IMG/VR virus record: IMGVR_UViG_3300027759_004177
Coordinates: 186,001 to 250,000 of that record
DNA: 64,000 bases
Direction: 5' to 3' (one strand)
A program made the position numbers and the translations under genes. This document shows positions 13 to 27,812 of the stretch, in pieces. The notes beneath the pieces were generated by a model, which saw only the letters and a list, made by a program, of their open reading frames with translations, ran no database searches and was not told the DNA's origin. The first letter of the stretch is position 1. Each line of letters begins with the position of its first letter.

Positions 13-1308
13 TTAATATCCAATACGTCGGAGAAAGTGTTTATATCTTGGTGCATAATCTAGTATCGTGTTGTTCCTGATTGTTTCAAAACTTTTTAAG
101 AAACTGACTAATTCTTTCAGTGATTCCTCTGCATCTGCAGGCGGGGTGTATGTTTTAACAAACTCCAGGTACTCAGTGGCCAACTGTGCAATAATCTCGT
201 GACTTAAATCACTTCTGCGAGTATTCACTTGCGGAGTATACGATCCTAATCGATCAACCACAGCCTGTAACTTTGCAACGGTTTCTTGTCTGATATCGTC
301 TGGCATCAGTTCCATACGCAAACAACGTGGTTGGTGCAATATGTTACAGCTCTCGGCGATAATGTTGTGTTCGATCATGAACTCAAAAACTTGGTCCAGT
401 TCGCTGATAGTAAACAAGTTAGGAGTGATACGTAGTTCTAGTTTTAATCCGGGATTACGATCACGCAAGGCCACAAACTTGAGAATGTTTGCCAAGATCT
501 GATCAGTAGGTCCTGGATAACGCACATAATCGTTTAATGACGTAACTGACTCTATACTGATACCTAGATGAAACTCTTGGAATCTAGGTATCAATTGTTC
601 TATACGTTCATCGTATATTGTGCCGTTGGTAGTTGTGCCAACTATTAGATCTTGTCCATCCAAGTGCTCGCAAATGTCGTAGAAGGCTTGATTATATAAT
701 GTTTCTCCACCCAGGAAGTGTATGTAACGTATGTATGGAAACGATTTTAACTCTGCAACAAAGCGATTGACTGTTGCTGAATCTTCAGTCCAAGACTGAT
801 ACGGCTTGGGTTCAGCAAATAATCGACTATCCAGCTTGTTTAATTTTTTATAGTCTGCAACAAGACGTGAGCTTGCTGTGGGGTCGCACATGATACAGGC
901 ACTATTACAAGTATTACCTAGGTCTATTTGTAAATCTGTTGGAAAATGTGGGCTGGCACCCGCATGACTGTTGCTGTATTCAAATACAGGCAAGTGTGGG
1001 CTAGAACGAAAGGTTAATGGAAACTCTGCAAGACCAATAGCACTTTTGTTTAGTTGTCTAACACGACCCGAAAGTTTTCCAAACTGATCTTGGTAGTAAC
1101 AAGGCTCACACTCTTTGGGTTTGTTGCCGGCTAATAGTTGTTGACGCAGGTCTCTCATGGGCCCACTGTTGTAAAAATCCATCAGCGAAGTTGTGCGTAT
1201 GTTGAAGGCGGTAGCACCGTTTTTGCTCCAGCGACACACATCATAACTACCATCGTAAGTTAATCTAATGTGGAACCAGGGACTTGAACAGAATGAGTCT
1301 TTTAACAT
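13..1308 (-). CDS. Radical SAM protein with N-terminal SPASM/twitch-like Cys cluster
   Basis: CxxxCxxC (CNSACIMC), GGE motif (FLGGETL), N-terminal CSSPW...C...CEPC. Confidence 0.85.
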   Translation of the reverse strand: MLKDSFCSSPWFHIRLTYDGSYDVCRWSKNGATAFNIRTTSLMDFYNSGPMRDLRQQLLAGNKPKECEPCYYQDQFGKLSGRVRQLNKSAIGLAEFPLTFRSSPHLPVFEYSNSHAGASPHFPTDLQIDLGNTCNSACIMCDPTASSRLVADYKKLNKLDSRLFAEPKPYQSWTEDSATVNRFVAELKSFPYIRYIHFLGGETLYNQAFYDICEHLDGQDLIVGTTTNGTIYDERIEQLIPRFQEFHLGISIESVTSLNDYVRYPGPTDQILANILKFVALRDRNPGLKLELRITPNLFTISELDQVFEFMIEHNIIAESCNILHQPRCLRMELMPDDIRQETVAKLQAVVDRLGSYTPQVNTRRSDLSHEIIAQLATEYLEFVKTYTPPADAEESLKELVSFLKSFETIRNNTILDYAPRYKHFLRRIGY

Positions 1309-9538: not shown

Positions 9539-9540
9539 GT

Positions 9541-9615
9541 TGGTTGCGGGGGACAGATTCGAACTGTCGATCTCCAGGTTATGAGCCTGACGGGTTGCCT
9601 CTTCCCTACCCCGCG
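9541..9615 (-). tRNA. tRNA-fMet (CAT), initiator type
   Basis: CGCGGGG...CCCCGCA-A-CCA with C1/A72 mismatch; loop CTCATAA. Confidence 0.9.
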
Positions 9616-9618
9616 ATA

Positions 9619-10221: not shown

Positions 10222-10246
10222 ACGTGCCTCCTTTCTTTTCTAAACA

Positions 10247-10320
10247 TGGCGCCGGTCCAGGGAATCGAACCCCGATCAGCGGTTTTGGAGACCGCTGTAA
10301 TGCCATTATACCAGACCGAC
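10247..10320 (-). tRNA. tRNA-Trp (CCA)
   Basis: Anticodon loop CTCCAAA, full cloverleaf, CCA end. Confidence 0.92.
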
Positions 10321-10321
10321 C

Positions 10322-10399
10322 TGGAAGTGAGGGTCGGATTTGAACCGACGGGGTTAGGGATTTGCAGTCCCTTGCATTGGGCCACTCTGCCACCTCACT
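10322..10399 (-). tRNA. tRNA-Cys (GCA)
   Basis: Loop CTGCAAA, U73, CCA end. Confidence 0.92.
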
Positions 10400-10407
10400 G
10401 CTGTTAC

Positions 10408-10481
10408 TGGAGCGGGATATCGGAATCGAACCGATGACGAAAGATTGGAAATCTTTAGTTTTGCCCCTAAACTAATCCCGC
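10408..10481 (-). tRNA. tRNA-Gly (TCC)
   Basis: GCGGGA acceptor, loop TTTCCAA, U73, CCA. Confidence 0.92.
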
Positions 10482-10490
10482 ATTATAATC

Positions 10491-10566
10491 TGGCGCTCCC
10501 GACCGGATTCGAACCGGTGTACTCGCCGTGAAAGGGCGATGTCCTAGGCCTCTAGACGACGGGAGC
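10491..10566 (-). tRNA. tRNA-Glu (TTC)
   Basis: Loop CTTTCAC, cloverleaf, CCA. Confidence 0.92.
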
Positions 10567-10572
10567 CTAACT

Positions 10573-10656
10573 TGGTGGAGAACACTGGGATCGAACCAGT
10601 CGTGCCATAGGCGCCGGATTTACAGTCCAGTGCATCACCATTGATGCTTCTTCTCC
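10573..10656 (-). tRNA. tRNA-Tyr (GTA)
   Basis: Loop CTGTAAA, long variable arm, CCA. Confidence 0.92.
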
Positions 10657-10662
10657 AAAACT

Positions 10663-10739
10663 TGGCGGAGTAGACGGGACTCGAACCCGCGACCCTCGGC
10701 GTGACAGGCCGATATTCTAACCAACTGAACTACCACTCC
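10663..10739 (-). tRNA. tRNA-Asp (GTC)
   Basis: GGAG acceptor, loop CTGTCAC, CCA. Confidence 0.92.
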
Positions 10740-12612: not shown

Positions 12613-13527
12613 TTATTTGTCCAGTTTAACTGTAGCACTCAAACGGCGCCATAACACCAGCTGACTGTTGTACCAGTTGTCTAGCTCAGAATCTGGAATT
12701 TGATTGTTAGGAATACAAGTATCTGCGGCATTGGCATCACGTACACTTTTGCTACGTGCAGCTTCTACAAAAATCTTGCGAATTTCACGAAACTTTTCTT
12801 CAGGAAATTTGCGTGGAATAAAGATCTGTTGCGAGCTACTCATGTCTGCAATTGCCGGTGCAAATCCTTGATTTTTCAACAAGGGAATACCTTTAATACT
12901 TTCTTTGCCGGTCATGCCCAACCAATAAACCCGTTTGGTAGCGTCTGGCTTTGTGTACTGCTCGCTATCGCCAATGAATCCCACAGCAAAATCAGTTTGC
13001 CCACCCAAGACATTTAACAATGCTTCGTTGGTGCTTTTAAACGGAACAATCTGCATGTTTGGATATTGTGCAGCCACTTGCAAGGCTACCAGGTGCGTGG
13101 TTGCCCCAAGTCCACTGATACCAATGTTTAACTTGGCGTTTCGAGGAACATCCTTCCATGTTTTATACTTTGTGCTTGTGATAACAAACGGTGCAATACA
13201 CATGGGCATTAGGCTTCTAAAGTCGGCCATGTTATGACTTTCCGTTGGAAACAGGTTGGGACGGATAAATCCTGCCGAACTGTTGATCCAGATTGAGTTG
13301 GGAGTGTTTAACACATGGTTGGCTGCAACTGTGCCACCAGCACCAGGTTTGGCATCAAATACAAATGTGTATTTGCTTTGAAGTTTGTTGCTTTCATCAG
13401 CAAGTGTGCGATAGAAGTTTGCTGCTGTGTCTGCTGGCGACCAAGAATAAAACATAGTTACTGTTTCTTTCTGCGCCATGGCAGATAAACTGACCATGGT
13501 TAATAGTGTGGCTAATAATCGTTTCAT
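12613..13527 (-). CDS. Tripartite tricarboxylate transporter (Bug/TctC) substrate-binding protein
   Basis: Signal peptide; KPGAGGTVAANHV, SGLGATTHL, VPFKS...VLGGQTD. Confidence 0.88.
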   Translation of the reverse strand: MKRLLATLLTMVSLSAMAQKETVTMFYSWSPADTAANFYRTLADESNKLQSKYTFVFDAKPGAGGTVAANHVLNTPNSIWINSSAGFIRPNLFPTESHNMADFRSLMPMCIAPFVITSTKYKTWKDVPRNAKLNIGISGLGATTHLVALQVAAQYPNMQIVPFKSTNEALLNVLGGQTDFAVGFIGDSEQYTKPDATKRVYWLGMTGKESIKGIPLLKNQGFAPAIADMSSSQQIFIPRKFPEEKFREIRKIFVEAARSKSVRDANAADTCIPNNQIPDSELDNWYNSQLVLWRRLSATVKLDK

Positions 13528-14736: not shown

Positions 14737-15243
14737 TTAACTGTTCAAAACTTTGGCAACACTATTCATAACACTAGCAATACGTCCGATGTCACGTAGG
14801 TTTTCTACTGTGTATCCTTCTTGCTTGAGTGTTTCATAGTGTGCTTTCACACAGAAGTGGCACTTGCCAACAATACTAGCTGCCAGGCTAAATGCTTCAA
14901 AGTTTGACTTGGTAGTTCCGCCATGACTAGCAATAGCGTTCATGCGTAACTGTGCTGGCAGGCCTTTAAGAGCAGGATCGTCAGCCATTTCAACATATGG
15001 ATACCACACATTGTTTTGTGCCATAATACTTGCGGCAGTCATTGCTGACTCTGCATGTACAGGTGCGTCTGCTAAAATCAAACTGACTAGTTTGCCGTTG
15101 CCTGTTGCGGCTAGTGCGGCTACAGCACAACCCATAGCCACATCCGCATCCAATGTGCTACGCACTAGAACAGCATCAAGATTTAACTTGGTGTCCTTTG
15201 CGTAGTCTGGCAACGCTTCTTTGACGGCGTCGTTGAAAGCCAT
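14737..15243 (-). CDS. ahpD: Alkyl hydroperoxide reductase AhpD
   Basis: LPDYAKDTKLNL, MAQNNVWYPY, CHFCVKAH (CxxC). Confidence 0.92.
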   Translation of the reverse strand: MAFNDAVKEALPDYAKDTKLNLDAVLVRSTLDADVAMGCAVAALAATGNGKLVSLILADAPVHAESAMTAASIMAQNNVWYPYVEMADDPALKGLPAQLRMNAIASHGGTTKSNFEAFSLAASIVGKCHFCVKAHYETLKQEGYTVENLRDIGRIASVMNSVAKVLNS

Positions 15244-15782
15244 TATAGTGTTTCTCCGCCCACTGTACGATTACATGCACACAGTTCGCCAGTTTGTAAC
15301 GCATCTAATACACGCAATGTTTCTTCTGGTGAGCGACCAACATTCAAGTTGTTGACAGTAACGTGTTGAATTTCGTTGTTGGGATCAACAATAAATGTGG
15401 CACGAAGTGCGGCACCTGCTGGCGCATAAAATACACCAAGTTGCTCGATCAAGCTCAACTCACCACGCTGTGTGTCAGCAAACTGGGTGTGAGTAATTTT
15501 CTTCAAATCCGCATGTGCGTTTTGCCATGCTACCTTGCAGAACTCATTGTCTGTGCTACCTGTTAGCAGGACTGCATCACGATCTGCAAAGTCACCTGCT
15601 AGTTTATCGTATGCAACAATTTCTGTTGGGCATACGAATGTGAAGTCTTTTGGATAGTAAACAATTACTTTCCACTTGCCTTCAAATGATTTTTCTGTAA
15701 TATCAAAGAAAGCGTCTTCTGGTTGTCCTGGCCGGACGCCTGTTACTACAAAAGGATCTAATTTTTGACCTACTGTTTTCAT
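15243..15782 (-). CDS. ahpC: Peroxiredoxin AhpC
   Basis: YPKDFTFVCPTEI peroxidatic motif; DALQTGELC. Confidence 0.95.
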   Translation of the reverse strand: MKTVGQKLDPFVVTGVRPGQPEDAFFDITEKSFEGKWKVIVYYPKDFTFVCPTEIVAYDKLAGDFADRDAVLLTGSTDNEFCKVAWQNAHADLKKITHTQFADTQRGELSLIEQLGVFYAPAGAALRATFIVDPNNEIQHVTVNNLNVGRSPEETLRVLDALQTGELCACNRTVGGETL

Positions 15783-15819: not shown

Positions 15820-15904
15820 TGGTGCCCAGAAAGAGACTCGAACTCTTAAGCCTTGCGGCACTGGCTTCTAAGACCAGCGTGTATACCAATTCCACCATCT
15901 GGGC
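15820..15904 (-). tRNA. tRNA-Leu (TAG)
   Basis: GCCCAGATGGTGGAATTGG..., loop CTTAGAA, long variable arm, CCA. Confidence 0.92.
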
Positions 15905-15910
15905 AATACT

Positions 15911-15987
15911 TGGTGGGCCTTGTCAGATTTGAACTGACCACCCAACGATTATGAGTCGTTTGCTCTAACCTAATGAGCTAAAGGCCC
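15911..15987 (-). tRNA. tRNA (CAT), probably Ile2 (lysidine type) rather than elongator Met
   Basis: GGGCCTT acceptor, loop CTCATAA, A73, CCA. Confidence 0.85.
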
Positions 15988-17771: not shown

Positions 17772-18530
17772 TTATCTACGCTCGATATCTTGTTCCACAC
17801 AGGCTGTGCCGTACTGTATTTCCACCAGTTTGCAAGGCTCTTTAAATGGATTTGTTAGCTGGTGCCATTCGCCGACTCCCACCCTATAGGTATCGTGTGT
17901 ATGTAGATGTTTAGGTGGTAATGAATATCCATTTTCCATAGCAGAATTTACTACAGCTTGTCCACTGGTAACTAACCAATATTCTGCACGTAGCTGATGG
18001 CGTTGCATACTTAGGCTTTGCCCCGGCTCTACTGTGAGTTCCTTGACTTTGGTGCCTGCAACTTCGTGTAGCACACGATAATATCCCCAAGGACGCTGGG
18101 TTTTAGGTGCTTTCCACTCCTCAAGGATCCAACTACTGCTGTTGGCTTTGTTTTCGCCACCAACACCAAATGCAAATTCAATGTTGGTATCTTGCACATC
18201 CATCTCAGGGATATTATCTTTTGTTCTATCGCCACCATTGGCAAAAACCAGAGTTGCTGCAGGATAGTGTGCTCTGACCTGTTGGATAAAATGTCGAGCT
18301 GATCCATCTTCATCATCAAAGGTGTAAACTTCATCTATCATGGCAAGATTGTTGACAACGCACAAGCGTTCGTTCCAAGGCATAAATGCACGGCCCTTCT
18401 TGCGTTCTAGCCATTCGTCGCTGTTTAGGCCAACAATTAATAGGTCGCCTAGAGATCGGGCTGCTTTGAAATAAGCGATATGTCCAGAGTGTACAGGATC
18501 AAACCCGCCGGTTGCCATTACTATTTTCAT
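17772..18530 (-). CDS. Cytidylyl/adenylyltransferase (RfaE/TagD-like) fused to a mannose-6-phosphate-isomerase-type cupin
   Basis: GGFDPVHSGH (HxGH), GLNSD, NGGDR; RPWG...LSMQRH...EYW...WHQL...VEIQYG. Confidence 0.88.
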   Translation of the reverse strand: MKIVMATGGFDPVHSGHIAYFKAARSLGDLLIVGLNSDEWLERKKGRAFMPWNERLCVVNNLAMIDEVYTFDDEDGSARHFIQQVRAHYPAATLVFANGGDRTKDNIPEMDVQDTNIEFAFGVGGENKANSSSWILEEWKAPKTQRPWGYYRVLHEVAGTKVKELTVEPGQSLSMQRHQLRAEYWLVTSGQAVVNSAMENGYSLPPKHLHTHDTYRVGVGEWHQLTNPFKEPCKLVEIQYGTACVEQDIERR

Positions 18531-19285
18531 CAGTCTGTGATCTTGTAGTAGTCTTTGTCTAGCCAGGTCACAACTAAATCTTCCAGTCTAGCATAGCCGT
18601 GCTGGCTTACGCTGTTGATTAAGCTGTCGTTGATGAGATTGCGTTCAGCCAAATCGTACCAGGTGGCCTGTTGTGTCAAGGACTCGTGGCCGCTGGCATA
18701 TACTGCTGCATACAACCAAGGCGTGCCACGTTTACGATAAAAATATGCATCTCTGCAATCAAATCCCGAGATGGCCAACATGTAAATTAGATTTAAAATA
18801 TTGTAATTGTAATATTGGTGACTATGTTGTTCAACCACTAAACTGCTGTTTTTCACATAGGTGCCCTGAGGTACTGTCAAGATCAGCATGCCATTTTCTT
18901 GCAAGGTTTCTTTCCATATCCGCAAACACTTGAATGGATCTAGAGCATATTGAAAACTATCGTGTGCCCAGATTAGATCCACTTGTCTGGGTACTACCCG
19001 TTCTTCGAAATTTCGCTCAATCGGTATCAAGTTTGGGTTACGGGCTAATATGTCAGGATCAATCTTGTTCAAATCTTGGTCTATGGCATATACTGTGTAA
19101 TTTCTAGGCTCGGCCGGTTCATCTCTGGTCATAAGGCTGGCCCACCATTCGGCATCAAGGCCGGCTCCACAACCCATGTCTGCTACACTGGTCAAACTAT
19201 CAAGAAAACTGTCGTAGCCGTACAACAAGTTTAATACTTCTAAACTGTGTTCGTGACTTAGGTAGGGATTTTTAAATAGACCCAT
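18530..19285 (-). CDS. Class I SAM-dependent methyltransferase
   Basis: VADMGCGAG; DLIWAHDSFQY; L...GMLILTVP. Confidence 0.85.
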   Translation of the reverse strand: MGLFKNPYLSHEHSLEVLNLLYGYDSFLDSLTSVADMGCGAGLDAEWWASLMTRDEPAEPRNYTVYAIDQDLNKIDPDILARNPNLIPIERNFEERVVPRQVDLIWAHDSFQYALDPFKCLRIWKETLQENGMLILTVPQGTYVKNSSLVVEQHSHQYYNYNILNLIYMLAISGFDCRDAYFYRKRGTPWLYAAVYASGHESLTQQATWYDLAERNLINDSLINSVSQHGYARLEDLVVTWLDKDYYKITD

Positions 19286-19526
19286 GTTGTAGAATTTCCA
19301 TCACCAATTTTTCTTTTAATTGCGTGAGTCTAAATTCCAATTGATGGCATGCTTCGGCTACTTCGGCATCTGTGCCCCAACCACGCTGTGTATTTAGATG
19401 GTATGCAAATTTTGCTACTGTGTCTTTTTCTAACTGTATATTTACAGCATCGTGCTTAGGTTTGGCTTGACAACAAAGTTCAAACTCTCGCAACAACTCA
19501 TCGGCACGTTGACGCCAATCCGTCAT
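19272..19526 (-). CDS. Hypothetical protein
   Basis: 84-aa ORF, ATGA-coupled to the upstream gene. Confidence 0.65.
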   Translation of the reverse strand: MTDWRQRADELLREFELCCQAKPKHDAVNIQLEKDTVAKFAYHLNTQRGWGTDAEVAEACHQLEFRLTQLKEKLVMEILQHGSI

Positions 19527-19975
19527 ACCACAATGTCTTCCATTCCGGCTGTGCGTAGTCTGACCACATGTCCCAACATGAAGTTCTTTGACTCAATGCC
19601 TTTCATGACGCCCAGCCAGCGATTGCGTAACAAGGCTACTTCATTGATAATAGTTTCCATGTCGACCACTTCATCCTCGGCTTCGGCATACTTTTCGGCA
19701 TCTCTTGATGTTAATGCTCTAGCATAGGCTTCTAAATACTTTTTATAATGACGTTGGCGGATTTTACGTAATTGTATGTTAAGAAATTCTAGCACAGCTT
19801 CAATCTCTTGCAGTTGATTAAATCTGTGTTCAGTCATGCCTGGCAAGTCGGACAACTCTTTTTCTACGCGACCACGTATTTTAATTTCTGTTTTGGCTGA
19901 CGTCATCTCGCCTTCGTAGTAGTCGATGAATTCAGGAATAACGCTTAGGTCAGCTACAATTCGATTATAAAACAT
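19523..19975 (-). CDS. uvsY: Recombination mediator protein, UvsY-like
   Basis: About 150-aa helical protein (KYLEAY...RDAEKYAEAEDEV) near uvsX and gp32. Confidence 0.6.
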   Translation of the reverse strand: MFYNRIVADLSVIPEFIDYYEGEMTSAKTEIKIRGRVEKELSDLPGMTEHRFNQLQEIEAVLEFLNIQLRKIRQRHYKKYLEAYARALTSRDAEKYAEAEDEVVDMETIINEVALLRNRWLGVMKGIESKNFMLGHVVRLRTAGMEDIVV

Positions 19976-21212
19976 CAAGGACTCCGGTTAGCCAAGGAAA
20001 AGTTTCACGCCAGTTGGTGTTGCGTCTACGATCAAGTTCGTCAAGATAAGTACGCAACTTGTTGATTTCGGTGGGATTTTTTTTGGTACTAGCAATTTGT
20101 TGTCTAACACCTTGCATATACTTACGTGCTTCCTGTTGTTGCCAAGTGTCTGCAGGCATAACTTCTAGCACCTGTGCAAAGTACGGATCTAGCAGTTCGG
20201 AATCAAAGATGTCTGGGTTCATGTAAGTGGGTGTGTTTGCGGTTATCAAATGATGCCCTATTTCTCTATGTGGTCTAAATGTGTTTATGTAATTGATCAA
20301 TGCTGGCATGGTAGGCACAGCCAATGCAGTGACCACTTGGTTTATGTTCAAAGTTATCCAACGTTGATTGACCAAATATTCAAAATTCTTTTTCCATTTT
20401 TCTAAATCCAAGCCCGATCTAATATACTCTTGTTCTGGACCCCAACAATCTATACTGGCAGTCACTTCAAAACGTTTGATCTTGCGTTCAGCAACCAAAT
20501 GTTTGATACGTTCTACATGCTCTTGCAATCGTTTATTATCGATCATCAAGTTACTTACTACATTAAATTCCAAATCTTTGTTACTATGATTATACAGGAA
20601 ATCCAAACAAGTGTCAAATTGTGCTTGATAAAATGGTTCTCCGCCCAACACATGAAATCTGCGTACAGTCAAATAATTATCGTCTAGCCAGGCCCATAAC
20701 TGTTCAGTCAGCAGGGCCTTGTCTGGATGCGGCCGATATTGGTTGTCAATTACAACACCGCCCAATTCAAATCTGCCGTGTTGATCATTTTCGTGTTTGA
20801 TGCGACTGCTAAACCCATCGTGGCAATATATACATCGTAGATTACAGGTATTGTCAAAATACACTTCTACAATTCTAGGGGTGACCATGATGGCCTCAGG
20901 ATCTGTGTCTAGTTCTGGCGGTGTTAGGTCTGGTATTGCCAGGTGTAGCATACGATCACTACTACCACCCGCACGTTCTATTTTTTCACAGTAATCGCAA
21001 CCACCTGAGGGCCATGCACCCAACAACATGGTTTGCCGATCTTGTAATTTTTTAGCAGTATTATGAAACTGATCAAACGATTCAGTTGATAGCGAACTTT
21101 TTTCTACTCTATGACAACTGTTGGTAGTTCCTTCGTACAAATAGATACTGCTCCAGGTCCATTTGAGCTGGCATGCAGTCGCTGTCTGTATTGGAAAATA
21201 CTTGTGTTGCAT
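19965..21212 (-). CDS. Radical SAM protein (N-terminal twitch-like)
   Basis: CQLKW..SCH..CDYC; CNLRCIYC; LGGEPF. Confidence 0.85.
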   Translation of the reverse strand: MQHKYFPIQTATACQLKWTWSSIYLYEGTTNSCHRVEKSSLSTESFDQFHNTAKKLQDRQTMLLGAWPSGGCDYCEKIERAGGSSDRMLHLAIPDLTPPELDTDPEAIMVTPRIVEVYFDNTCNLRCIYCHDGFSSRIKHENDQHGRFELGGVVIDNQYRPHPDKALLTEQLWAWLDDNYLTVRRFHVLGGEPFYQAQFDTCLDFLYNHSNKDLEFNVVSNLMIDNKRLQEHVERIKHLVAERKIKRFEVTASIDCWGPEQEYIRSGLDLEKWKKNFEYLVNQRWITLNINQVVTALAVPTMPALINYINTFRPHREIGHHLITANTPTYMNPDIFDSELLDPYFAQVLEVMPADTWQQQEARKYMQGVRQQIASTKKNPTEINKLRTYLDELDRRRNTNWRETFPWLTGVLDVL

Positions 21213-21445
21213 TACCAGTTGGAATCTTCGCCTTCGTCATCATCTTGTTCGTCATCGGCGGTGTATTCTTTGAGAGCTTTTTTCAAGGTGCTGTCTGTTG
21301 TACCAAACTCTTTAAGCTCTTGATCGCCCAACATATCAACCATGACACTCATTAGGTTATCGGCACACTCTTGACGATCCTTTGCAGGAACATACTGTTT
21401 CATAATGGTATATAGTTCGCTTAAAACTTCTGTATCGATGGTCAT
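21212..21445 (-). CDS. Small acidic hypothetical protein
   Basis: 77 aa, acidic tail, SD GAGG, coupled overlaps on both sides. Confidence 0.7.
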   Translation of the reverse strand: MTIDTEVLSELYTIMKQYVPAKDRQECADNLMSVMVDMLGDQELKEFGTTDSTLKKALKEYTADDEQDDDEGEDSNW

Positions 21446-22578
21446 ACTTTTTCCTCTTTGTTAATCCACGTTGTAAAATTTTCTGGAAATACGTCTAACA
21501 AAAGTGATCTGCGATGAGCAAATTCTGTTAGATAATGCTTTAACTTGGTTTTTTGTTCCATTGTTGATTCTACTGCTAAAGTTTCTTTGATTTCTTGGTC
21601 ATGATATTTATATTCAATTTGACATAACTGTGTCTTGGACTCAGGATCTAACACACTGGCACTTAGATATGCAGGATCGTTGCAGGGATTTAACAAATCT
21701 TTGTCAGTTGAATATTCCCGTTGAAAATCATCGAATCCATGCACAGTTAAATTACTCAACACACTACAAAATCTATAGTCAAACTGTGCGGCTATCAAAT
21801 CCAAGTTACGTCTAAACTGATCCCAGGTATTACCATGCCTGTTAAATTCGTATAATGCACCTGTGTTTTCTGCACTGACAGTAAATGTAGTGCTTTTAGG
21901 TAACTGTGACAATATCTGCGTTAATCGCTTGGTATTAACTCCTAGGCCTGTAAAAATATCAACGGATCCTGTTAGTCCTGTTACCAACTCTGTTAGTCCA
22001 TTGTATAAAAATGGCTCGCCACCGGTAATTTCTATTTGCTTGACTGTTTTAAATCTTTTTATTTCTGACAAAATAGTTTGGTAACTATCGCTGGCTTTTA
22101 TAGCAGGTTGTCCTAGTTGTAACACAATTCTATCGTTGGCTGTGATTTGATATCTTGGCTCATCAAAATATGCACCGTGATCTTTAACATCACGTAACCA
22201 AGCAGTACTGTACTGTTTACAGCAATAACTACAGGTTAGATTGCAATCGCTACCAACATTGATGTGTAACACTTGAGGACCAGCATAGATATCTGTGTGT
22301 GTTCTTTCTCCAGAATTCATCAGAGTACGTCGGCTGGGCAATCCACGACGTTCAGCTGACCAACAAGTATCTTCGCAACTTGCCACAGGCTCGTTGTTTA
22401 ACATTGCTTGTCGTTCTTGTATTAGTACGGGCGTGTTAAACAACTGTCCTGGGTTATTTCTAAGCCAGGACAAGTCAATCTTGGTAGCTGTAGCAGCACA
22501 GCACGAATTCATAGTTCTTCGTTCAGGCTCTACAGTTAACCACCAAAATTTTTGCGAGCAATAATTACTCTGCGACAT
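21442..22578 (-). CDS. Radical SAM protein (N-terminal twitch-like)
   Basis: CSQKF..SCC..CEDTC; CNLTCSYC; TGGEPF; start probably ATG 22578 after GAGG. Confidence 0.85.
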   Translation of the reverse strand: MSQSNYCSQKFWWLTVEPERRTMNSCCAATATKIDLSWLRNNPGQLFNTPVLIQERQAMLNNEPVASCEDTCWSAERRGLPSRRTLMNSGERTHTDIYAGPQVLHINVGSDCNLTCSYCCKQYSTAWLRDVKDHGAYFDEPRYQITANDRIVLQLGQPAIKASDSYQTILSEIKRFKTVKQIEITGGEPFLYNGLTELVTGLTGSVDIFTGLGVNTKRLTQILSQLPKSTTFTVSAENTGALYEFNRHGNTWDQFRRNLDLIAAQFDYRFCSVLSNLTVHGFDDFQREYSTDKDLLNPCNDPAYLSASVLDPESKTQLCQIEYKYHDQEIKETLAVESTMEQKTKLKHYLTEFAHRRSLLLDVFPENFTTWINKEEKV

Positions 22579-23686
22579 CAACCTCTTTTTTAGACTTCTT
22601 TGGCTTGTCTTCAACCACTGCGTCTAATTCAGCTTCTAGTTCTTCAATGTCCACTGACTTCTGATGTGGATTGGCAACAAAATCTACCATGGCCTTGTCC
22701 AAGCATGAATCTTCGTTGCGTTCCCATGCCTTGCGAAACTTCTTGATAATTTCACCTGTAGCCAGTGTATACACCAGGCTGTTGCCTTCTTTCTTCAGCA
22801 AGTCTTTGCCTTCAAATAGGTCAACCAAACCCGAGTAAGGATTCATACCTTCTTCGTACGGAATCTTGACCTGAACAGATTCAAATGGTTTGGCATAGCG
22901 TGTTTTCATGATCTTGCAAGCGGCACGGATGCCTTTTACTTCTGAAATCTTGTTGCCATCCTCATCTTCTTTGAGTTTTAACTTACGCATAGCTACAACA
23001 ATAGAGCTTGCATAGATAAAACCTTGTCCTCCTGATATTTTGTCGTCCGGATCAAACATGTCCTGTGACGCATAAGTGTGTGCTGTTGTTACTAGGCCAA
23101 TATTCAAGCTACCAAACATGTTTACGCAATTACGTACCAGGGCGGCCAGTGCCTTGGGCTTACGACCCATGTCACCTTTCATGTCCCCTGCTTCGAATTG
23201 ATTTACATCCGTGGGGGTAAGTAGCATACCCAACGAATCTACTACAAATAGTACTTTGGGACGTTGATCTTCTGGTAGTGTTTTGTATTCTTTGACAAAC
23301 TCCGAGATCATCTTGCCCACATCATCGATCATGGCCATGTTTAGTTTGAGTAACTTGTCCTCACTGGTATCTACATTTAATGCATGTAGCCATTTCTCGT
23401 CGAGTGCGTTTTCGCTATCAACCAGGATCACATAAATGCCTTGCTTTTGTGCATTGGCTACCAAGTTGCCCGAACAAATAAAACTTTTACCTGCGCCAGA
23501 CTCGCCAGCAAACACAGTAACTTTACCTAGTGGAACACCTTTGTTAAAGTCTCCTGAAATTAGATAGTTGAGAGCATAGTTATTTGTACTGATCCAATCT
23601 GTGGGATCGGTAAAGCCAACGCTGATACCGTCAATACTTTTGGTAATGCTCTTGCGAAATTTTGATACGTCAAATGGTTTAGCCAT
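22565..23686 (-). CDS. uvsX: RecA-like recombinase UvsX
   Basis: Walker A GESGAGKS, DSENALD, VVDSLG, SGGQG. Confidence 0.93.
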   Translation of the reverse strand: MAKPFDVSKFRKSITKSIDGISVGFTDPTDWISTNNYALNYLISGDFNKGVPLGKVTVFAGESGAGKSFICSGNLVANAQKQGIYVILVDSENALDEKWLHALNVDTSEDKLLKLNMAMIDDVGKMISEFVKEYKTLPEDQRPKVLFVVDSLGMLLTPTDVNQFEAGDMKGDMGRKPKALAALVRNCVNMFGSLNIGLVTTAHTYASQDMFDPDDKISGGQGFIYASSIVVAMRKLKLKEDEDGNKISEVKGIRAACKIMKTRYAKPFESVQVKIPYEEGMNPYSGLVDLFEGKDLLKKEGNSLVYTLATGEIIKKFRKAWERNEDSCLDKAMVDFVANPHQKSVDIEELEAELDAVVEDKPKKSKKEVDVAE

Positions 23687-24833
23687 GATAGTTTTCCTTG
23701 ATGTTATATAAATCTTTAAATATTTTACTGCTGTCTACTTTACGTCTTTGATCCAATGTATATAGCTCTGCCATTGAACCTAAGAAATCTTTTTCGAATG
23801 GTTGCTCAATGTAATGTAGCATGTTACGGTAACTATCTTCTAATAGATAGCCCGGGCTTTCATTGATCCTAGTTTCCAAAGTGCTCTTAACTGATTGTAA
23901 CACAGAGTCTGGCAAATGTCTAATGTTTAGGTATTCTGGCTCTAATAGTGCACCAATCACAAATGCATTATTATGGAATCCCTGTGCTTTTAGGAGATCC
24001 ACACAACCAAATATGCTTTGGTAGTTTAATAGGAAGTGTAGCATATTAAACGTAATTTTATGATCAAGTGAGTTTATGTGTTTTAAATTGTCTTGGAAAT
24101 CTTGCCAACGACCACCGTGTCTAACGTACTCAAACTCATCTTCCGTAGTTTCTACACTCACTGTCCAGTGTACATTACGAAACTCACATATACGCTCAAA
24201 TACTCGGGTATCTACTTTACTTAGATTTGTGTTGATACGTAAGTTTACATCAGGATCTAACAGGTCTAGCAACTCTAAGTTTTCCCGCATCAGCAGAGGC
24301 TCGCCGCCAGCTAGATAAACATGCTCAAGTTGATCGGCACGGTCAAATATATACTGTTTAAAATTGGCACGTTGTTCTTGTGTCGGTGTTTGTTGTTTGA
24401 TATCCAATTCATCTGCCCAACGGCTGCTAAACTCTGGATTACAATATACACAAGCAAAGTTACACAAGTTGGTCCAACGTACATCAATGGTTTTTAAATC
24501 AAAGTTTCCAGCACGATATGTATCCAAGCTGACATTTTTTAATTCTCGTATGTAAAACTTACGATCGCTGATAATATCAAATCCTTTTTTACCATGCTCT
24601 AAATCATAGCATGTGCGGCACGAAGGTACCGCAACATCTGATACAATTTTATTTTGTATCAGTACATTGGTGTTGCCATGTACTACTTGTTCTATTGGAG
24701 TGTCTTTGATATTGCCAATAGTACCAGCACTACGAATACAATTTTTGACTGTACCATCAAATCCGTTGTACATGAGGCCAGTCCAAGGTATAGGACAAAA
24801 ATATGGATTAGTTAATACGTCCTTGGGTGTCAT
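23679..24833 (-). CDS. Radical SAM protein (N-terminal twitch-like)
   Basis: CPIPW..NC..CRTC; CNFACVYC; AGGEPL. Confidence 0.85.
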   Translation of the reverse strand: MTPKDVLTNPYFCPIPWTGLMYNGFDGTVKNCIRSAGTIGNIKDTPIEQVVHGNTNVLIQNKIVSDVAVPSCRTCYDLEHGKKGFDIISDRKFYIRELKNVSLDTYRAGNFDLKTIDVRWTNLCNFACVYCNPEFSSRWADELDIKQQTPTQEQRANFKQYIFDRADQLEHVYLAGGEPLLMRENLELLDLLDPDVNLRINTNLSKVDTRVFERICEFRNVHWTVSVETTEDEFEYVRHGGRWQDFQDNLKHINSLDHKITFNMLHFLLNYQSIFGCVDLLKAQGFHNNAFVIGALLEPEYLNIRHLPDSVLQSVKSTLETRINESPGYLLEDSYRNMLHYIEQPFEKDFLGSMAELYTLDQRRKVDSSKIFKDLYNIKENYHG

Positions 24834-25321
24834 GTCAATGAGATGTCCGGTATAATAAATCCGTTAGCTTCTGCTGTAGAAAAAAGTTTAACTAGTGTAC
24901 GTGCCCATTCTGCTGGATTGATTACTTTACCTGGACGCACCAAAGTTATATTTGGACCGGCGGCATTCATATAACGCAATTGATGTACTGCTTGTTCTAG
25001 TGCAACCTTTTGCAATCGATATTGATCCATGCCTTCTATAACACTAACTGGTTGCTGTGCCATCATTGTGCTAATAACAATAATATGCTTTTGCGTATTA
25101 TTCCAGCGACGATACACTTCAAACAACAATTCAGTTTGTGCAAAACCTGCTTGTGCATTGTTAATAAACACATCGCACGGCTCAATCAAGCTGGCAATCT
25201 TGGGAGTGTTGCGTATGTTGTTACCTTCGCGAGTGCTCAAACCAACAATCTCGTTGCCATAGTATGCTTCGGCCAGAGCTTGACCAATGCCTGCTGTGTG
25301 TCCTGTGATTGCTATTTTCAT
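24830..25321 (-). CDS. Short SDR-like Rossmann-fold protein
   Basis: TGHTAGIG, FINNA, YxxxK (YRLQK). Confidence 0.75.
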   Translation of the reverse strand: MKIAITGHTAGIGQALAEAYYGNEIVGLSTREGNNIRNTPKIASLIEPCDVFINNAQAGFAQTELLFEVYRRWNNTQKHIIVISTMMAQQPVSVIEGMDQYRLQKVALEQAVHQLRYMNAAGPNITLVRPGKVINPAEWARTLVKLFSTAEANGFIIPDISLT

Positions 25322-26202
25322 TCGATACCCCGTAATTGTTTTTGTTGTTGTATATATGCTTGTACTTGTTCTTGATTCTTATTATTGACATCTAATTCTT
25401 TGGGCTCTTTTAAATAAGCATAGCCATGATCGATTCCGTGTTCCTCGGCAAACTTTTTTATATTGGGCAAATCGTGCAAGTTCAACACACTAACTGTGGT
25501 CCACAAGTTTAGTTTCACAGGCATGGTTTTATATCGCATTAAGTTTTGATAAAATGTCGCCCACTTGATAGGCCAACGCACATATTCAAACACTGAACCG
25601 ATACCATCACAACTCGCTGTGACCGTGACTTCTATGCCACGGCCGGCAATCTCTGTTAGCTCTTCTAACACCACGTTACAATTGGTATTAAGTCTCAGTG
25701 TACGCAAGTTCGAAGGCAAGTTGGCCAATAGTCTTCGATAGTTTTTGCTATAACTGGGTTCGCCGCCGTTGATATCCAAATGCACAATACGATCTTGTGG
25801 CAAATCCCAAAAACGATTACTGTTATCTATTATAGTAAAAGTGCCACTGGTCAACGCACCTATCCTGGTGCTACATTCAGGACTGCAAGTCAGACAAGCG
25901 GCATTGCACACATTGTCTAATACTCCGCCTACTTGTAAATAATCCCTCTGCGTTTCTAGGGCATCCACAGCAATGGCGTGTATTCTTATACTGCTAGGCG
26001 ACTCTTGCTCGACTTCTTGACAACGTCGACATTCTACCGGCCACTCACCTTGTTCAAACTGTTCACGTATTTTACGCAACCAGCGACTGTTATTCATTTC
26101 TTCAAGGCTATCAAACTGTGCAGGATTGACCATGTGACCACAGCGGCTTACTGTGCCATTGGGGTTAAAGCGAACAAAGTGATCTAGTCTAGGACATTGC
26201 AT
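25318..26202 (-). CDS. Radical SAM protein (N-terminal twitch-like)
   Basis: CPRL..RCGH..CRRC; CNAACLTC; NGGEPS. Confidence 0.85.
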   Translation of the reverse strand: MQCPRLDHFVRFNPNGTVSRCGHMVNPAQFDSLEEMNNSRWLRKIREQFEQGEWPVECRRCQEVEQESPSSIRIHAIAVDALETQRDYLQVGGVLDNVCNAACLTCSPECSTRIGALTSGTFTIIDNSNRFWDLPQDRIVHLDINGGEPSYSKNYRRLLANLPSNLRTLRLNTNCNVVLEELTEIAGRGIEVTVTASCDGIGSVFEYVRWPIKWATFYQNLMRYKTMPVKLNLWTTVSVLNLHDLPNIKKFAEEHGIDHGYAYLKEPKELDVNNKNQEQVQAYIQQQKQLRGIE

Positions 26203-26795
26203 ATTTGAATGCTCCGATCAATAACTTCATCGTACAAAGCATGATGATTGTCTTGAACGAATCTAACGATTTGTTTGAGTGGAACTGTTTGTCCCATAAA
26301 ATCTTCGTAAAGTATTTTATCTAATTGTAGATAATATTTTAATTTTTGATTGGTGCCGAAATAGTCTATCAGCGTTCGATCTCGTGCCAGCACATTCCAT
26401 GTGTGTTCTGTGGCCGTGTGTAATTCTTCTATGGGTCTAAAGTACATCCAAGCATCGGTAAACTTTTGCAGATTGACGATCCAATGGAACTGCAAACTAA
26501 AATGACTGTTTAAAAACAAATACTGGTCGATCATGGTCAGTGCAGTTGCACGATCAAGGTGTGGATTTTGTCTTAGGTATGTTTGCACTCCGCTGACATA
26601 GCGTTCAAAAGGTTCACGTAAAAATATTTCAACTGTACGCAACTCCCGCATTTCAAAGTAATTGAGTTTTCTAGGGTTGGCAGCAAGTAAACTACTGCTA
26701 CCATTTTTAAAAATAGGATAGACATAGCGATCGGTCCCTACTTCAAGGATCTCGCATTGGTCTGGAAAGAGTATGGGGTCTAGATAAGACAGCAT
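26184..26795 (-). CDS. Sulfotransferase-family-like protein
   Basis: IFKNGSSSL (5'-PSB-like) and LREPFERYVSG (3'-PB-like), NSHFSLQ. Confidence 0.55.
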   Translation of the reverse strand: MLSYLDPILFPDQCEILEVGTDRYVYPIFKNGSSSLLAANPRKLNYFEMRELRTVEIFLREPFERYVSGVQTYLRQNPHLDRATALTMIDQYLFLNSHFSLQFHWIVNLQKFTDAWMYFRPIEELHTATEHTWNVLARDRTLIDYFGTNQKLKYYLQLDKILYEDFMGQTVPLKQIVRFVQDNHHALYDEVIDRSIQICNVLD

Positions 26796-26802
26796 AGGAA
26801 AT

Positions 26803-26823
26803 GTGGGGGACCGTCTCCCCCAC
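26803..26823 (-). terminator. Strong hairpin after the gp32 gene (terminator or stability element)
   Basis: GTGGGGGA-GACGG-TCCCCCAC followed by ATTTCC (weak U-tract). Confidence 0.55.
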
Positions 26824-26837
26824 TGACACAAGCAATA

Positions 26838-27812
26838 TTACTGTTTCTGACGGTTACGAATCATTGCCAAAATGTCTTCAGCACGTTGGCTGGATGGTTT
26901 GGCTTCTGCAGCCGGAGTTGCTATCGGTGCAGTTGGAGCAGGTACATCATCTTCTTCCGCTGGTTCTGCCGCCACAGCTGGTGCTGGTGCACTTTCTGCG
27001 GCTGGTGCAACGTTAGGAACATCCAAGCCATATGGCTTGTAGTAAGCACCCCAACGATCTGGATCGTATGGTTGGCCATCTACTGATGCTTCAAACATTT
27101 CTTTGAGAACCTTGAGCTCTACTTCGCTGGGTTTCTTAGGCAAGAAGTCTGACAAGTTGAACAGGCCATGCTCATCAATTGCGGCTTGTTCTTCTGCTGT
27201 CAATGCTGACTCTTTGCGGCTCCACTTAGAAGTTGAGTAGTCTGCGTAGCCACCTTTGCTTGTTTTAACGATTTGGAAATCCAAACCACGTTGCAAGTCT
27301 GTTGGCAACTCTTCCATTTCTGGATCCATCAATGCAGCCTTGATGATGTTAAAAATCTGTGGGCTGATTGTAAAGCGACGGATTGGGTTGGCTGGAACCT
27401 TGTCGTCACTCAGTGCGTTTTCACGTACAAAGCCTTGGAACACATAAGATTTTTTCTTCCAGTACTTGCGACCCATTTCCTCTAGGCTAGGATCTTTGAA
27501 CCACGGACGAACTTCTGCCAAGATTGGGCAAGCTTCGCCGTACATTTCCATACATGGAACTTGTACAACCACAGGCTTACTATCTGCTTGACCTTTGACA
27601 CCAGCAAATGGTAGTCGGATCATTGCACGTTCAGCCCAAAAGAAGCTGTTCTTGGTGTTGCCGTCTGGGAGGAATCTAATGCGTGTTGTGGAACCTTCTG
27701 CAATGTTCCAGTGTGGATAGATAGCGTTGTCGCCACCTGATTGTCTGTTACCGCCTTTACCGCCTTCTGATGCTTGGAGCTTTGCTCTAATTTCTGCTAA
27801 TGTTGTAGCCAT
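26838..27812 (-). CDS. Single-stranded DNA-binding protein, T4 gp32-like
   Basis: IRFLPD, C...CPI, YWKKKSY, GYADYSTSKW, low-complexity tail; beside uvsX/uvsY. Confidence 0.88.
   Translation of the reverse strand: MATTLAEIRAKLQASEGGKGGNRQSGGDNAIYPHWNIAEGSTTRIRFLPDGNTKNSFFWAERAMIRLPFAGVKGQADSKPVVVQVPCMEMYGEACPILAEVRPWFKDPSLEEMGRKYWKKKSYVFQGFVRENALSDDKVPANPIRRFTISPQIFNIIKAALMDPEMEELPTDLQRGLDFQIVKTSKGGYADYSTSKWSRKESALTAEEQAAIDEHGLFNLSDFLPKKPSEVELKVLKEMFEASVDGQPYDPDRWGAYYKPYGLDVPNVAPAAESAPAPAVAAEPAEEDDVPAPTAPIATPAAEAKPSSQRAEDILAMIRNRQKQ

What the first reader, a model, noticed from the sequence alone, without database searches (positions are those of the whole stretch)
19965..26202. Radical-SAM paralogue expansion threaded through the uvsY-uvsX-gp32 operon, with the auxiliary Cys cluster at the N-terminus
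Seen: four radical-SAM genes here plus one at 13..1308, all with an N-terminal C..(P)W...C...CxxC module before CxxxCxxC and GGE, overlapping the core recombination genes by a few bases. Established: SPASM/twitch domains are normally C-terminal. No precursor peptide is evident. Inference: a diversified tailoring family acting on sugars, DNA bases or virion proteins, co-expressed with replication.
Basis: partly seen in the sequence, partly recalled or inferred. Interest (0 to 1): 0.6.

Follow-up and report, generated by a model that had tools for sequence, protein, structure and literature searches.

The report
Phage radical-SAM enzymes with N-terminal twitch
A freshwater jumbo phage has inserted several deeply diverged iron-sulfur "radical SAM" enzymes of an already catalogued but uncharacterised family between its core recombination genes, most likely to tailor a sugar-like small molecule, though their chemistry is untested.

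Summary
All five window genes (13-1308, 19965-21212, 21442-22614, 23679-24833, 25318-26202, minus strand) are radical SAM proteins. Each has four invariant N-terminal Cys ahead of CxxxCxxC and GGE, and they are packed with overlapping stops and starts among uvsY, uvsX and gp32.

The architecture is not new. All five match NCBIfam NF033640, "twitch domain-containing radical SAM protein" (three above the cutoff). The N-terminal domain's only significant PDB sequence match is the C-terminal twitch of BtrN, with all four Cys columns aligned.

The window lies in a 357-kb freshwater jumbo phage with 12 such genes and 5 other radical SAM genes. None reaches the cutoff of a characterised family.

In about 30 related viral contigs:
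- uvsX-(77 aa)-rSAM415-uvsY-methyltransferase-sugar nucleotidyltransferase/cupin is conserved.
- The block sulfotransferase-like/rSAM294/SDR/rSAM384 is mostly present or absent as a unit.
- A cultured relative has gp32-uvsX-uvsY directly adjacent.

Context weakly favours tailoring of a sugar or other small molecule (about 0.4). Peptide/protein and DNA modification remain open. No precursor peptide, DpdA, second ThyA-like gene, TET/JBP match or C5 methylase was found.

Verdict: new members, in an unusually large phage set, of a known but functionally uncharacterised family.

The parts
13..1308 (-). rSAM431: N_Twi radical SAM paralogue
   Evidence: NF033640 231.7 bits (cutoff 170). Pfam SPASM at residues 7-70 (27.5 bits, over the cutoff) and Radical_SAM at 130-279.
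14737..15782 (-). AhpC/peroxiredoxin (15243-15782) and CMD/AhpD-like (14737-15243) pair downstream of the operon
   Evidence: Pfam AhpC-TSA 1.6e-20 and CMD 4.9e-10. The pair recurs in relatives. Any link to Fe-S enzyme protection is inference only.
17772..18530 (-). Sugar-phosphate nucleotidyltransferase-like domain fused to a cupin (CTcupin252)
   Evidence: Pfam CTP_transf_like plus MannoseP_isomer C-terminal/Cupin_2. NCBIfam rfaE_dom_II 73.9 bits and the GMP_PMI cupin part, both below cutoff. Conserved downstream of uvsY in most relatives.
18530..19285 (-). SAM-dependent methyltransferase (MT251)
   Evidence: Pfam Methyltransf_11 23.2 bits, over the cutoff. Conserved after uvsY in relatives.
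19523..19978 (-). UvsY-like recombination mediator
   Evidence: Pfam UvsY weak, E 0.0039. 71-84% identical in relatives at the same position. The cultured relative annotates PF11056 at this position.
19965..21212 (-). rSAM415: N_Twi radical SAM, the copy found in all related contigs
   Evidence: NF033640 242.3 bits. AF2 model pLDDT 94.5. 2561 metagenomic relatives at E<=1e-5. It sits just upstream of uvsY in most of the relatives inspected.
20589..20617 (-). Perfect sigma-70 consensus (TTGACA-17-TATAAT) inside rSAM415, about 610 nt upstream of uvsY
   Evidence: 12 of 12 matches. This is a consensus match only; function is untested.
21212..21445 (-). Conserved 77-aa helical protein with an acidic C-terminal tail (small77)
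   Evidence: No family hit. Orthologues of 29-97% identity lie next to uvsX or the rSAM genes in relatives. No Cys-rich or Gly-rich core typical of RiPP precursors.
21442..22614 (-). rSAM390: N_Twi-like radical SAM, present in only some relatives. Start is TTG 22614 or, more likely, ATG 22578.
   Evidence: NF033640 157.7 bits, below the 170 cutoff, over model positions 2-369. It has CxxxC in place of CxxC. Present or absent among relatives.
22565..23686 (-). UvsX/RecA-like recombinase
   Evidence: Pfam RecA 1.4e-13, PHROG 97 at 1.4e-65. 63-69% identical to the recombinases of GAP32, CBB, Atu_ph07 and Vibrio phage 2.275.O.
23679..24833 (-). rSAM384: N_Twi radical SAM, part of the four-gene cassette
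   Evidence: NF033640 228.1 bits. Pfam SPASM at residues 13-76 (21.2 bits, just under the cutoff) and Radical_SAM 55 bits. 64-69% identical in most cassette-bearing distant relatives.
24830..25321 (-). Short SDR-like protein (SDR163), part of the cassette
   Evidence: Weak NCBIfam SDR hits, E 1e-4. adh_short/Epimerase are 'faint' for the orthologue in L004. It travels with the cassette.
25318..26202 (-). rSAM294: short N_Twi-like radical SAM, part of the cassette
   Evidence: NF033640 153.8 bits, below cutoff, over model positions 12-335. Four N-terminal Cys plus CxxxCxxC. 52-78% identical in most cassette-bearing distant relatives.
26184..26795 (-). p215: sulfotransferase-like protein, first gene of the cassette. 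The true start is probably M13 at 26795.
   Evidence: K42, S46, R72, P74, R77, S80 and G81 are invariant; N43, G44 and S47 nearly so. Together these form the K-N-G-x-S-S and R-x-P-x-x-R-x-x-S-G motifs. Pfam Sulfotransfer_2 is weak in 3 of 14 orthologues. In the exhaustive structure search the top 11 chains are all sulfotransferases, Z 5.5-3.1. Foldseek found nothing significant.
26803..26823 (-). GC-rich hairpin between gp32 and the cassette
   Evidence: Terminator-like scan: 8-bp stem with 6 GC pairs and a poor T-tail. Its function is inferred only.
26838..27812 (-). gp32-type single-stranded DNA-binding protein
   Evidence: PHROG 1192 at 1.3e-64.

Best explanation
The five window genes, and seven more elsewhere in the genome, belong to the curated but functionally uncharacterised family NF033640 (N_Twi_rSAM).

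Architecture:
- A BtrN-type twitch domain sits at the N-terminus instead of the C-terminus.
- It carries four fully conserved Cys, predicted to hold one fully ligated auxiliary [4Fe-4S] cluster.
- A standard radical SAM core follows.

Origin:
- They are accessory genes inserted into the ancestral gp32-uvsX-uvsY module of an abundant freshwater jumbo-phage lineage, and are probably transcribed with it.

Function (inferred, not shown):
- Each paralogue uses the 5'-deoxyadenosyl radical to abstract a hydrogen atom from a different position or intermediate of a small-molecule substrate, most likely a (nucleotide-)sugar.
- The N-terminal cluster acts as electron acceptor, as proposed for BtrN.
- The enzymes work alongside the linked SDR-like, sulfotransferase-like, methyltransferase, nucleotidyltransferase/cupin and carbamoyltransferase genes to build a heavily tailored glycan or sugar-derived metabolite.
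- The destination of that product (virion, host envelope or DNA) is unknown.
For: Shown:
- Family membership and conserved Cys.
- The N-terminal domain hits Pfam SPASM across the whole model.
- As a profile, its only significant PDB match is the C-terminal twitch of BtrN (E 4.5e-4), with the four Cys columns aligned to four BtrN Cys at chain positions 169, 187, 232 and 235.
- BtrN's auxiliary cluster is ligated by four Cys, and BtrN oxidises an aminocyclitol (PMC9012708).
- A cultured relative has gp32-uvsX-uvsY directly adjacent, so the rSAM genes are insertions.
- p215/rSAM294/SDR/rSAM384 is mostly present or absent as a unit in relatives (two partial forms). rSAM294 and rSAM384 are about as conserved as gp32.
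- p215 is sulfotransferase-like.
- A methyltransferase and an RfaE-like nucleotidyltransferase/cupin are conserved after uvsY.
- GT8 and GT25 genes follow in relatives.
- A tandem array of five copies lies about 3 kb from a NodU-like carbamoyltransferase.
- No room for a precursor gene and no RRE-type hit.
- Two A-type Fe-S carrier genes are in the genome.
Against: - No substrate evidence exists at all.
- Most characterised SPASM/twitch enzymes modify peptides.
- This genome has no GT2, GT8 or GT25 hit and only one GT1-family hit, far from these loci.
- Most neighbours of the five-gene array have no family assignment.
- Bacterial homologues in MAGs sit in arrays without adjacent sugar genes.
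- The whole-protein fold search ties PFL-AE, SkfB, BlsE, viperin and anSME at Z about 13. BtrN is not among the listed top hits.
- The sulfotransferase call rests on Z 5.5 and short motifs only.
Confidence: 0.4

Rival explanations
1. The enzymes modify peptides or proteins, as RiPP-like maturases or as tailoring enzymes for phage proteins. The targets might be the conserved 77-aa acidic protein or virion proteins, with cross-links, epimerisation or oxidation as in SPASM/twitch maturases.
For: - SPASM-family homology of the auxiliary domain.
- The closest whole-fold matches include the peptide maturases SuiB, SkfB, anSME, ChlB and EpeE.
- A conserved small ORF (small77) accompanies rSAM415 in most relatives.
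Against: - small77 lacks a Cys/Gly/Ser-rich core, and its position relative to rSAM390 varies.
- There is only one such small gene for 12 enzymes.
- No RRE/PqqD, protease or exporter genes were detected nearby.
- The small ORFs next to the bacterial homologues look like toxin-antitoxin genes on reading their translations (no family search was run).
Confidence: 0.2
2. The enzymes act on DNA or nucleotides, as hypermodification or nucleotide-pool chemistry, which would explain their position among gp32, uvsX and uvsY.
For: - Tight translational coupling with recombination genes.
- rSAM415 keeps its place next to uvsY across the lineage.
- From my own knowledge, not checked here: radical SAM enzymes take part in phage thymidine hypermodification and in 7-deazaguanine synthesis.
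Against: - No DpdA/TGT.
- Only one ThyA-family gene, scoring like a canonical thymidylate synthase at 352 bits.
- No C5 DNA methylase.
- No TET/JBP hit, although that search had no positive control.
- The four-gene cassette and rSAM390 are dispensable in many relatives.
- Gaps between core genes are usual insertion sites for accessory genes in T4-like phages (my own knowledge, not tested here).
Confidence: 0.15
3. The paralogues have unrelated, independent roles, for example counter-defence or host takeover, and share only a scaffold. Their clustering would reflect insertion hot-spots rather than a pathway.
For: - Paralogues are 20-44% identical and interleave with bacterial members on the tree, so they are old subfamilies rather than recent duplicates.
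- Copies are scattered over at least five loci.
Against: - Co-inheritance of the four-gene cassette as a unit.
- Tandem arrays of 3-5 copies in both phage and bacteria argue for joint action.
Confidence: 0.15

Closest known systems
NCBIfam NF033640, N_Twi_rSAM (twitch domain-containing radical SAM protein)
   Same: Full-length HMM matches for all five window genes and twelve genome-wide. The four N-terminal Cys, CxxxCxxC and GGE are all present.
   Different: Two window copies (390 aa and 294 aa) score below the 170-bit cutoff, and the 294-aa copy lacks the C-terminal part of the model. The family itself has no assigned function, and no paper on it was found in the held library.
BtrN (butirosin 2-deoxy-scyllo-inosamine dehydrogenase), the archetypal twitch radical SAM enzyme
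   Same: The N-terminal domain profile aligns to the BtrN twitch (E 4.5e-4), with all four Cys columns matching. BtrN's auxiliary cluster has four Cys ligands.
   Different: The domain order is reversed: twitch first, radical SAM core second. The core is not specifically BtrN-like in fold searches. The substrate is unknown.
SPASM radical SAM maturases (anSME, SuiB, SkfB, PqqE)
   Same: Homologous auxiliary-cluster domain (Pfam PF13186 hits) and radical SAM core, at Z 12-14.
   Different: Only four Cys, so one cluster rather than two. The domain is N-terminal. No RRE domain or precursor peptide was found.
T4-like marine environmental viral genome with 12 radical SAM genes plus Fe-S carrier genes (Nishimura et al. 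2017, PMC5332604)
   Same: A large phage carrying a dozen radical SAM genes together with A-type Fe-S carrier genes.
   Different: That one is a marine 183-kb genome; this one is a freshwater 357-kb genome of a lineage whose UvsX is closest to GAP32, CBB and Atu_ph07. Whether its genes are N_Twi type was not checked. The paper proposed no function.
Ralstonia phage RsoM2USA and Vibrio phages K566/K567
   Same: The only cultured phages in the 50,697-record collection with detectable homologues. RsoM2USA has two copies over the cutoff.
   Different: Identity is 22-26%. In RsoM2USA the genes are annotated hypothetical; in K566/K567 the hit is annotated only as a radical SAM domain protein. The RsoM2USA copy inspected has only hypothetical neighbours; the other loci were not inspected.

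Membership tests
NF033640 N_Twi_rSAM | Whole-protein HMM score at or above the curated 170-bit cutoff | tested here: met
   242.3 (415 aa), 228.1 (384 aa) and 231.7 (431 aa) bits. Not met by the 390-aa copy (157.7) or the 294-aa copy (153.8), which still align over most of the model at E about 1e-45. Genome-wide, 10 of 12 copies are over the cutoff.
NF033640 N_Twi_rSAM | N-terminal Cys-rich twitch-like domain preceding the CxxxCxxC radical SAM motif | tested here: met
   C14, C33, C72, C75, then C123, C127, C130, are invariant in 36 sequences. The four N-terminal Cys are invariant in 17 N-terminal domains.
SPASM/twitch radical SAM enzymes | Auxiliary-cluster domain homologous to SPASM/twitch | tested here: met
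   PF13186 at 27.5 bits (over the cutoff) in rSAM431 and 21.2 bits in rSAM384. The N-terminal profile matches the BtrN twitch at E 4.5e-4.
SPASM/twitch radical SAM enzymes | The domain is a C-terminal extension of the radical SAM core | tested here: not met
   The domain occupies residues about 10-90, ahead of CxxxCxxC at about 100-135, in all copies.
SPASM (two-cluster) subtype | Seven or eight Cys binding two auxiliary clusters | tested here: not met
   Only four Cys are conserved outside the radical SAM motif. This is consistent with a twitch (one cluster).
SPASM/twitch radical SAM enzymes | The auxiliary [4Fe-4S] cluster is actually bound | not testable with these tools
   Needs Fe/S analysis, EPR or Mossbauer spectroscopy on reconstituted protein.
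RiPP radical SAM maturases | Adjacent precursor peptide and an RRE/PqqD-like recognition domain | tested here: not met
   Overlapping ORFs leave no room for a precursor gene. There are no RRE-type Pfam or NCBIfam hits. The only small neighbour, small77, is not precursor-like. The test is weak, because a remote RRE could be missed.
BtrN-type sugar dehydrogenases | Specific similarity of the catalytic core, and an aminocyclitol or sugar substrate | tested here: inconclusive
   The twitch domain matches, but BtrN is not among the listed top whole-fold matches. The substrate is untestable here.
Known phage DNA hypermodification systems | A starter enzyme: DpdA/TGT, a hydroxymethylase-type ThyA paralogue, or TET/JBP plus a C5 methylase | tested here: not met
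   No TGT. A single canonical-scoring ThyA. No Tet_JBP, but that search had no positive control. No DNA_methylase.

The most novel reading that the evidence does not exclude
The dozen N-terminal-twitch radical SAM enzymes, with their sulfotransferase-like, SDR-like, methyltransferase, nucleotidyltransferase/cupin and carbamoyltransferase neighbours, form a phage-encoded multi-step radical pathway. It would build a previously undescribed hypermodified sugar or sugar-decorated macromolecule, possibly on the phage DNA given the conserved embedding in gp32-uvsX-uvsY. If so, the function of a whole uncharacterised enzyme family abundant in freshwater viromes would be defined.
Probability: 0.2. Interest if true: 0.8.

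Novelty: new member of a known kind. Interest (0 to 1): 0.55.

Why it matters
Radical SAM enzymes are oxygen-sensitive and costly in iron, sulfur and Cys.

- One phage of oxic freshwater carries 17 of them, 12 from a single uncharacterised family.
- Some copies (rSAM294, rSAM384) are kept about as conserved as gp32 across the relatives that carry them.
- The lineage is seen in freshwater metagenomes from at least 13 studies.

This points to an important chemistry in infection that has not been identified. Defining the substrate would annotate thousands of metagenomic proteins. It would also show what a reversed twitch-then-core domain order does mechanistically, and it might reveal a new virion, envelope or DNA modification.

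Tried and rejected
- **Megablast against cultured phages:** the region gave no match.
- **Profile search of genome contigs:** A single-protein search then gave four bacterial MAG loci, whose context was uninformative for function.
- **Word-index protein searches:** both were saturated by close viral relatives and gave no named bacterial homologue.
- **Fold searches of rSAM415:** only a generic radical SAM core match.
- **Foldseek of p215:** nothing significant.
- **Complex prediction of rSAM415 with the 77-aa protein:** returned 'no answer'. It is evidence neither for nor against binding.
- **Literature:** searches for the family name, for an N-terminal SPASM/twitch, and for radical SAM in jumbo phages found no functional study. 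The Grell et al. review is not held.
- **Classical identities for the radical SAM genes:** QueE, NrdG, MoaA and viperin identities were considered and rejected for all 17. Every hit is far below its cutoff.
- **Big representative-protein search:** not used, because no claim here rests on an absence of relatives.
Full report
**1. What is in the sequence**

The minus strand between 19523 and 27812 carries a run of tightly packed genes:

| Coordinates | Gene |
|---|---|
| 26838-27812 | gp32-type SSB |
| 26184-26831 | 215-aa ORF; true start probably M13 at 26795 |
| 25318-26202 | 294-aa radical SAM |
| 24830-25321 | 163-aa SDR-like protein |
| 23679-24833 | 384-aa radical SAM |
| 22565-23686 | UvsX |
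| 21442-22614 | 390-aa radical SAM; start TTG 22614 or ATG 22578 |
| 21212-21445 | 77-aa acidic protein |
| 19965-21212 | 415-aa radical SAM |
| 19523-19978 | UvsY-like protein |

- Neighbouring genes from p215 to uvsY overlap by 1-19 nt (14 or 50 nt at rSAM390/uvsX, depending on the start codon). Only the gp32-p215 junction has a gap.
- A fifth radical SAM gene lies at 13-1308.
- Pfam finds Radical_SAM in four of the five and a SPASM domain at the N-terminus of two.
- The assignments of UvsX (PHROG 97, 1.4e-65), gp32 (PHROG 1192, 1.3e-64) and UvsY (weak Pfam hit plus conserved position) hold.

**2. The architecture is real but already catalogued**

- All five proteins match NCBIfam NF033640, "N_Twi_rSAM: twitch domain-containing radical SAM protein", over essentially the whole model.
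- Scores are 242, 228 and 232 bits for the 415-, 384- and 431-aa copies, above the 170-bit cutoff. The 390- and 294-aa copies score 158 and 154 bits, below it.
- In an alignment of 36 paralogues and orthologues the invariant positions are C14, C33, C72, C75, R87, C123, C127, C130, S135, G190-G191-E192, S253, R265 and R397.
- A profile of the N-terminal 85-130 residues has one significant kind of hit among PDB sequences: the C-terminal twitch domain of BtrN (E 4.5e-4). The four invariant Cys columns align with the BtrN Cys at chain positions 169, 187, 232 and 235.
- BtrN's auxiliary [4Fe-4S] cluster is ligated by four Cys, and SPASM/twitch domains are described as C-terminal extensions (PMC9012708). 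That those four BtrN Cys are the ligands is my own recollection of the structure paper.
- So this is a twitch, not a full SPASM domain, and it sits in front of the core instead of behind it. Cluster binding itself cannot be tested here.
- The AlphaFold2 model of the 415-aa protein is confident (pLDDT 94.5).
- Fold searches match only the generic radical SAM core. PFL-AE, SkfB, BlsE, viperin and anSME tie at Z about 13, with Foldseek TM-scores of 0.3-0.4.

**3. The genome**

- The window is part of a 356,865-bp viral record.
- Its UvsX is 63-69% identical to those of the jumbo phages GAP32, CBB, Atu_ph07 and Vibrio phage 2.275.O.
- The genome has 12 N_Twi genes, 10 of them above the cutoff, including a head-to-tail array of five at genome 318-325 kb.
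- It has five further CxxxCxxC radical SAM genes. One of these is a classical enzyme with a C-terminal SPASM domain.
- No copy reaches the cutoff of any characterised family. QueE, NrdG, MoaA, viperin and the RiPP maturases all score far below theirs.
- The paralogues share only 20-44% identity.
- On a maximum-likelihood tree they interleave with bacterial members. They are old subfamilies, not recent duplicates.
- The genome also encodes two A-type Fe-S carrier proteins. This echoes the report of a marine T4-like viral genome with 12 radical SAM genes and Fe-S assembly genes (PMC5332604).

**4. Distribution**

- Among 50,697 phage records, only Ralstonia phage RsoM2USA (two copies over the cutoff), Vibrio phages K566/K567 and one marine single-cell virus show homologues, at 22-26% identity.
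- Metagenomes hold thousands of relatives: 2561 and more than 7000 proteins at E<=1e-5 for two copies.
- The nearest ESM Atlas clusters are 88-100% viral.
- Near-identical DNA occurs in freshwater or aquatic metagenomes from at least 13 studies.
- Bacterial MAGs (Bacteroidota, Chitinophagaceae, Bacteriovoracaceae) carry 39-40% identical homologues, again in arrays of two to five. Their flanking genes are ordinary chromosomal genes.
- The small ORFs beside one such array look like toxin-antitoxin genes on reading their translations, not precursor peptides.

**5. Synteny**

- The cultured relative Vibrio phage 2.275.O has SSB, UvsX and UvsY directly adjacent. The radical SAM genes are therefore insertions into an ancestral recombination module.
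- I compared about 30 related viral contigs whose rSAM415 orthologue is 53-100% identical.
- The order uvsX, 77-aa gene, rSAM415, uvsY, then a methyltransferase and a nucleotidyltransferase/cupin fusion, recurs.
- rSAM390 comes and goes.
- The four genes p215/rSAM294/SDR/rSAM384 are mostly present together (about 11 contigs) or absent together (about 14), with two partial forms (L030, L050).
- Where the full cassette is present in distant relatives, rSAM294 and rSAM384 are mostly 64-78% identical, similar to gp32 at 60-67%. This argues for strong constraint.

**6. Clues to function**

For a sugar-like substrate:
- p215 orthologues conserve a K-N-G-x-S-S motif and an R-x-P-x-x-R-x-x-S-G motif.
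- Three of 14 give weak Pfam Sulfotransfer_2 hits.
- In an exhaustive structural search the first 11 chains are all sulfotransferases, at Z 5.5-3.1. This is a moderate call, not a firm one.
- The 252-aa gene after the methyltransferase combines an RfaE-domain-II-like nucleotidyltransferase with a GMP/PMI-type cupin.
- Relatives continue with GT8- and GT25-like genes.
- The five-gene array lies about 3 kb from a NodU-like carbamoyltransferase.

Against:
- The genome has no GT2, GT8 or GT25 hit and only one GT1-family gene, which lies elsewhere.
- Most neighbours are unassignable.

DNA-modification markers are absent:
- No TGT/DpdA.
- One canonical-scoring ThyA.
- No C5 methylase.
- No TET/JBP, though that search had no positive control.

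**7. Expression**

- Overlapping stops and starts imply co-translation.
- A promoter-like site precedes gp32.
- A GC-rich hairpin follows gp32.
- A perfect sigma-70 consensus lies inside rSAM415, upstream of uvsY. All of these are consensus matches only.
- Contigs from two freshwater metatranscriptome libraries match parts of the 77-aa gene, rSAM390, uvsX, the SDR gene and rSAM294, mostly without mismatch. Such libraries can contain DNA, so this is weak evidence.

**8. Verdict**

It is not new, because a curated family already describes it.
- The biology remains unexplained, and I found no functional study in the held library.
- I commit to radical-mediated tailoring of a sugar-like small molecule by a set of specialised paralogues, with the N-terminal cluster as electron relay, at about 0.4.
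- Protein/peptide modification (0.2), DNA/nucleotide chemistry (0.15) and unrelated independent roles (0.15) remain live.

Noticed in passing
window 1316-1405, 9463-10739, 15820-15987 (minus strand): Ten or eleven tRNA genes (Ser, Met x2, Trp, Cys, Gly, Glu, Asp, Leu and others). One, at 9463-9538, ARAGORN reads with an odd two-base anticodon. Rfam also finds a weak extra tRNA at 10576-10656.
   Followed up: no
window 14737-15782 (minus strand): A peroxiredoxin (AhpC/TSA) and an AhpD-like CMD gene pair lie just downstream of the operon and recur in relatives. They might protect oxygen-labile Fe-S enzymes, but this is speculation.
   Followed up: partly
window 24830-25321 versus L015:5851-6390 and L017:5848-6387: The SDR-like gene is only 49-50% identical, and 16 residues shorter, in two contigs whose flanking genes are 87-99% identical. 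It is 60-68% identical in more distant relatives. This looks like a local allele replacement.
   Followed up: no
window 20589-20617 (minus strand): A perfect TTGACA-17-TATAAT consensus lies inside the rSAM415 coding sequence, about 610 nt upstream of uvsY. By my rough estimate the chance expectation in this 19-kb scan is about 0.007.
   Followed up: no
L006:6488-19382 (genome 316488-329382, outside the window): A non-twitch radical SAM gene (278 aa), then a head-to-tail array of five N_Twi genes with overlapping ends, then several unassignable ORFs and a NodU-like carbamoyltransferase. The copy at L006:10917-12248 is the best match to NF033640 (398 bits) and is 75-93% identical in the 120 best metagenomic relatives listed.
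   Followed up: partly
genome 53591-53893 and 147031-147336 (outside the window): Two A-type Fe-S carrier (IscA/HesB, PF01521) genes, both over the Pfam cutoff. No flavodoxin was found.
   Followed up: no
L010:1487-2941 (genome 77487-78941): A classical radical SAM enzyme with a C-terminal SPASM domain (TIGR04085 domain hit; best full-length hits PapB-like and anSME-like, all below cutoff) in the same phage.
   Followed up: no
window 12613-13527 (minus strand): A phage-encoded TctC-like tripartite tricarboxylate transporter receptor (Pfam 29.7 bits, over the cutoff).
   Followed up: no
L096:8692-14717 (Bacteriovoracaceae MAG, 118-kb contig): A bacterial array of three full N_Twi genes plus two shorter radical SAM genes. 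One of the shorter genes also has an N-terminal SPASM hit (44 bits). The array is flanked by PrkA kinase, pseudouridine synthase and HAD hydrolase genes.
   Followed up: partly
genome 106711-107043 (outside the window): The only GT1-family glycosyltransferase hit in the genome lies about 2.4 kb from another non-twitch radical SAM gene at 103210-104328.
   Followed up: no
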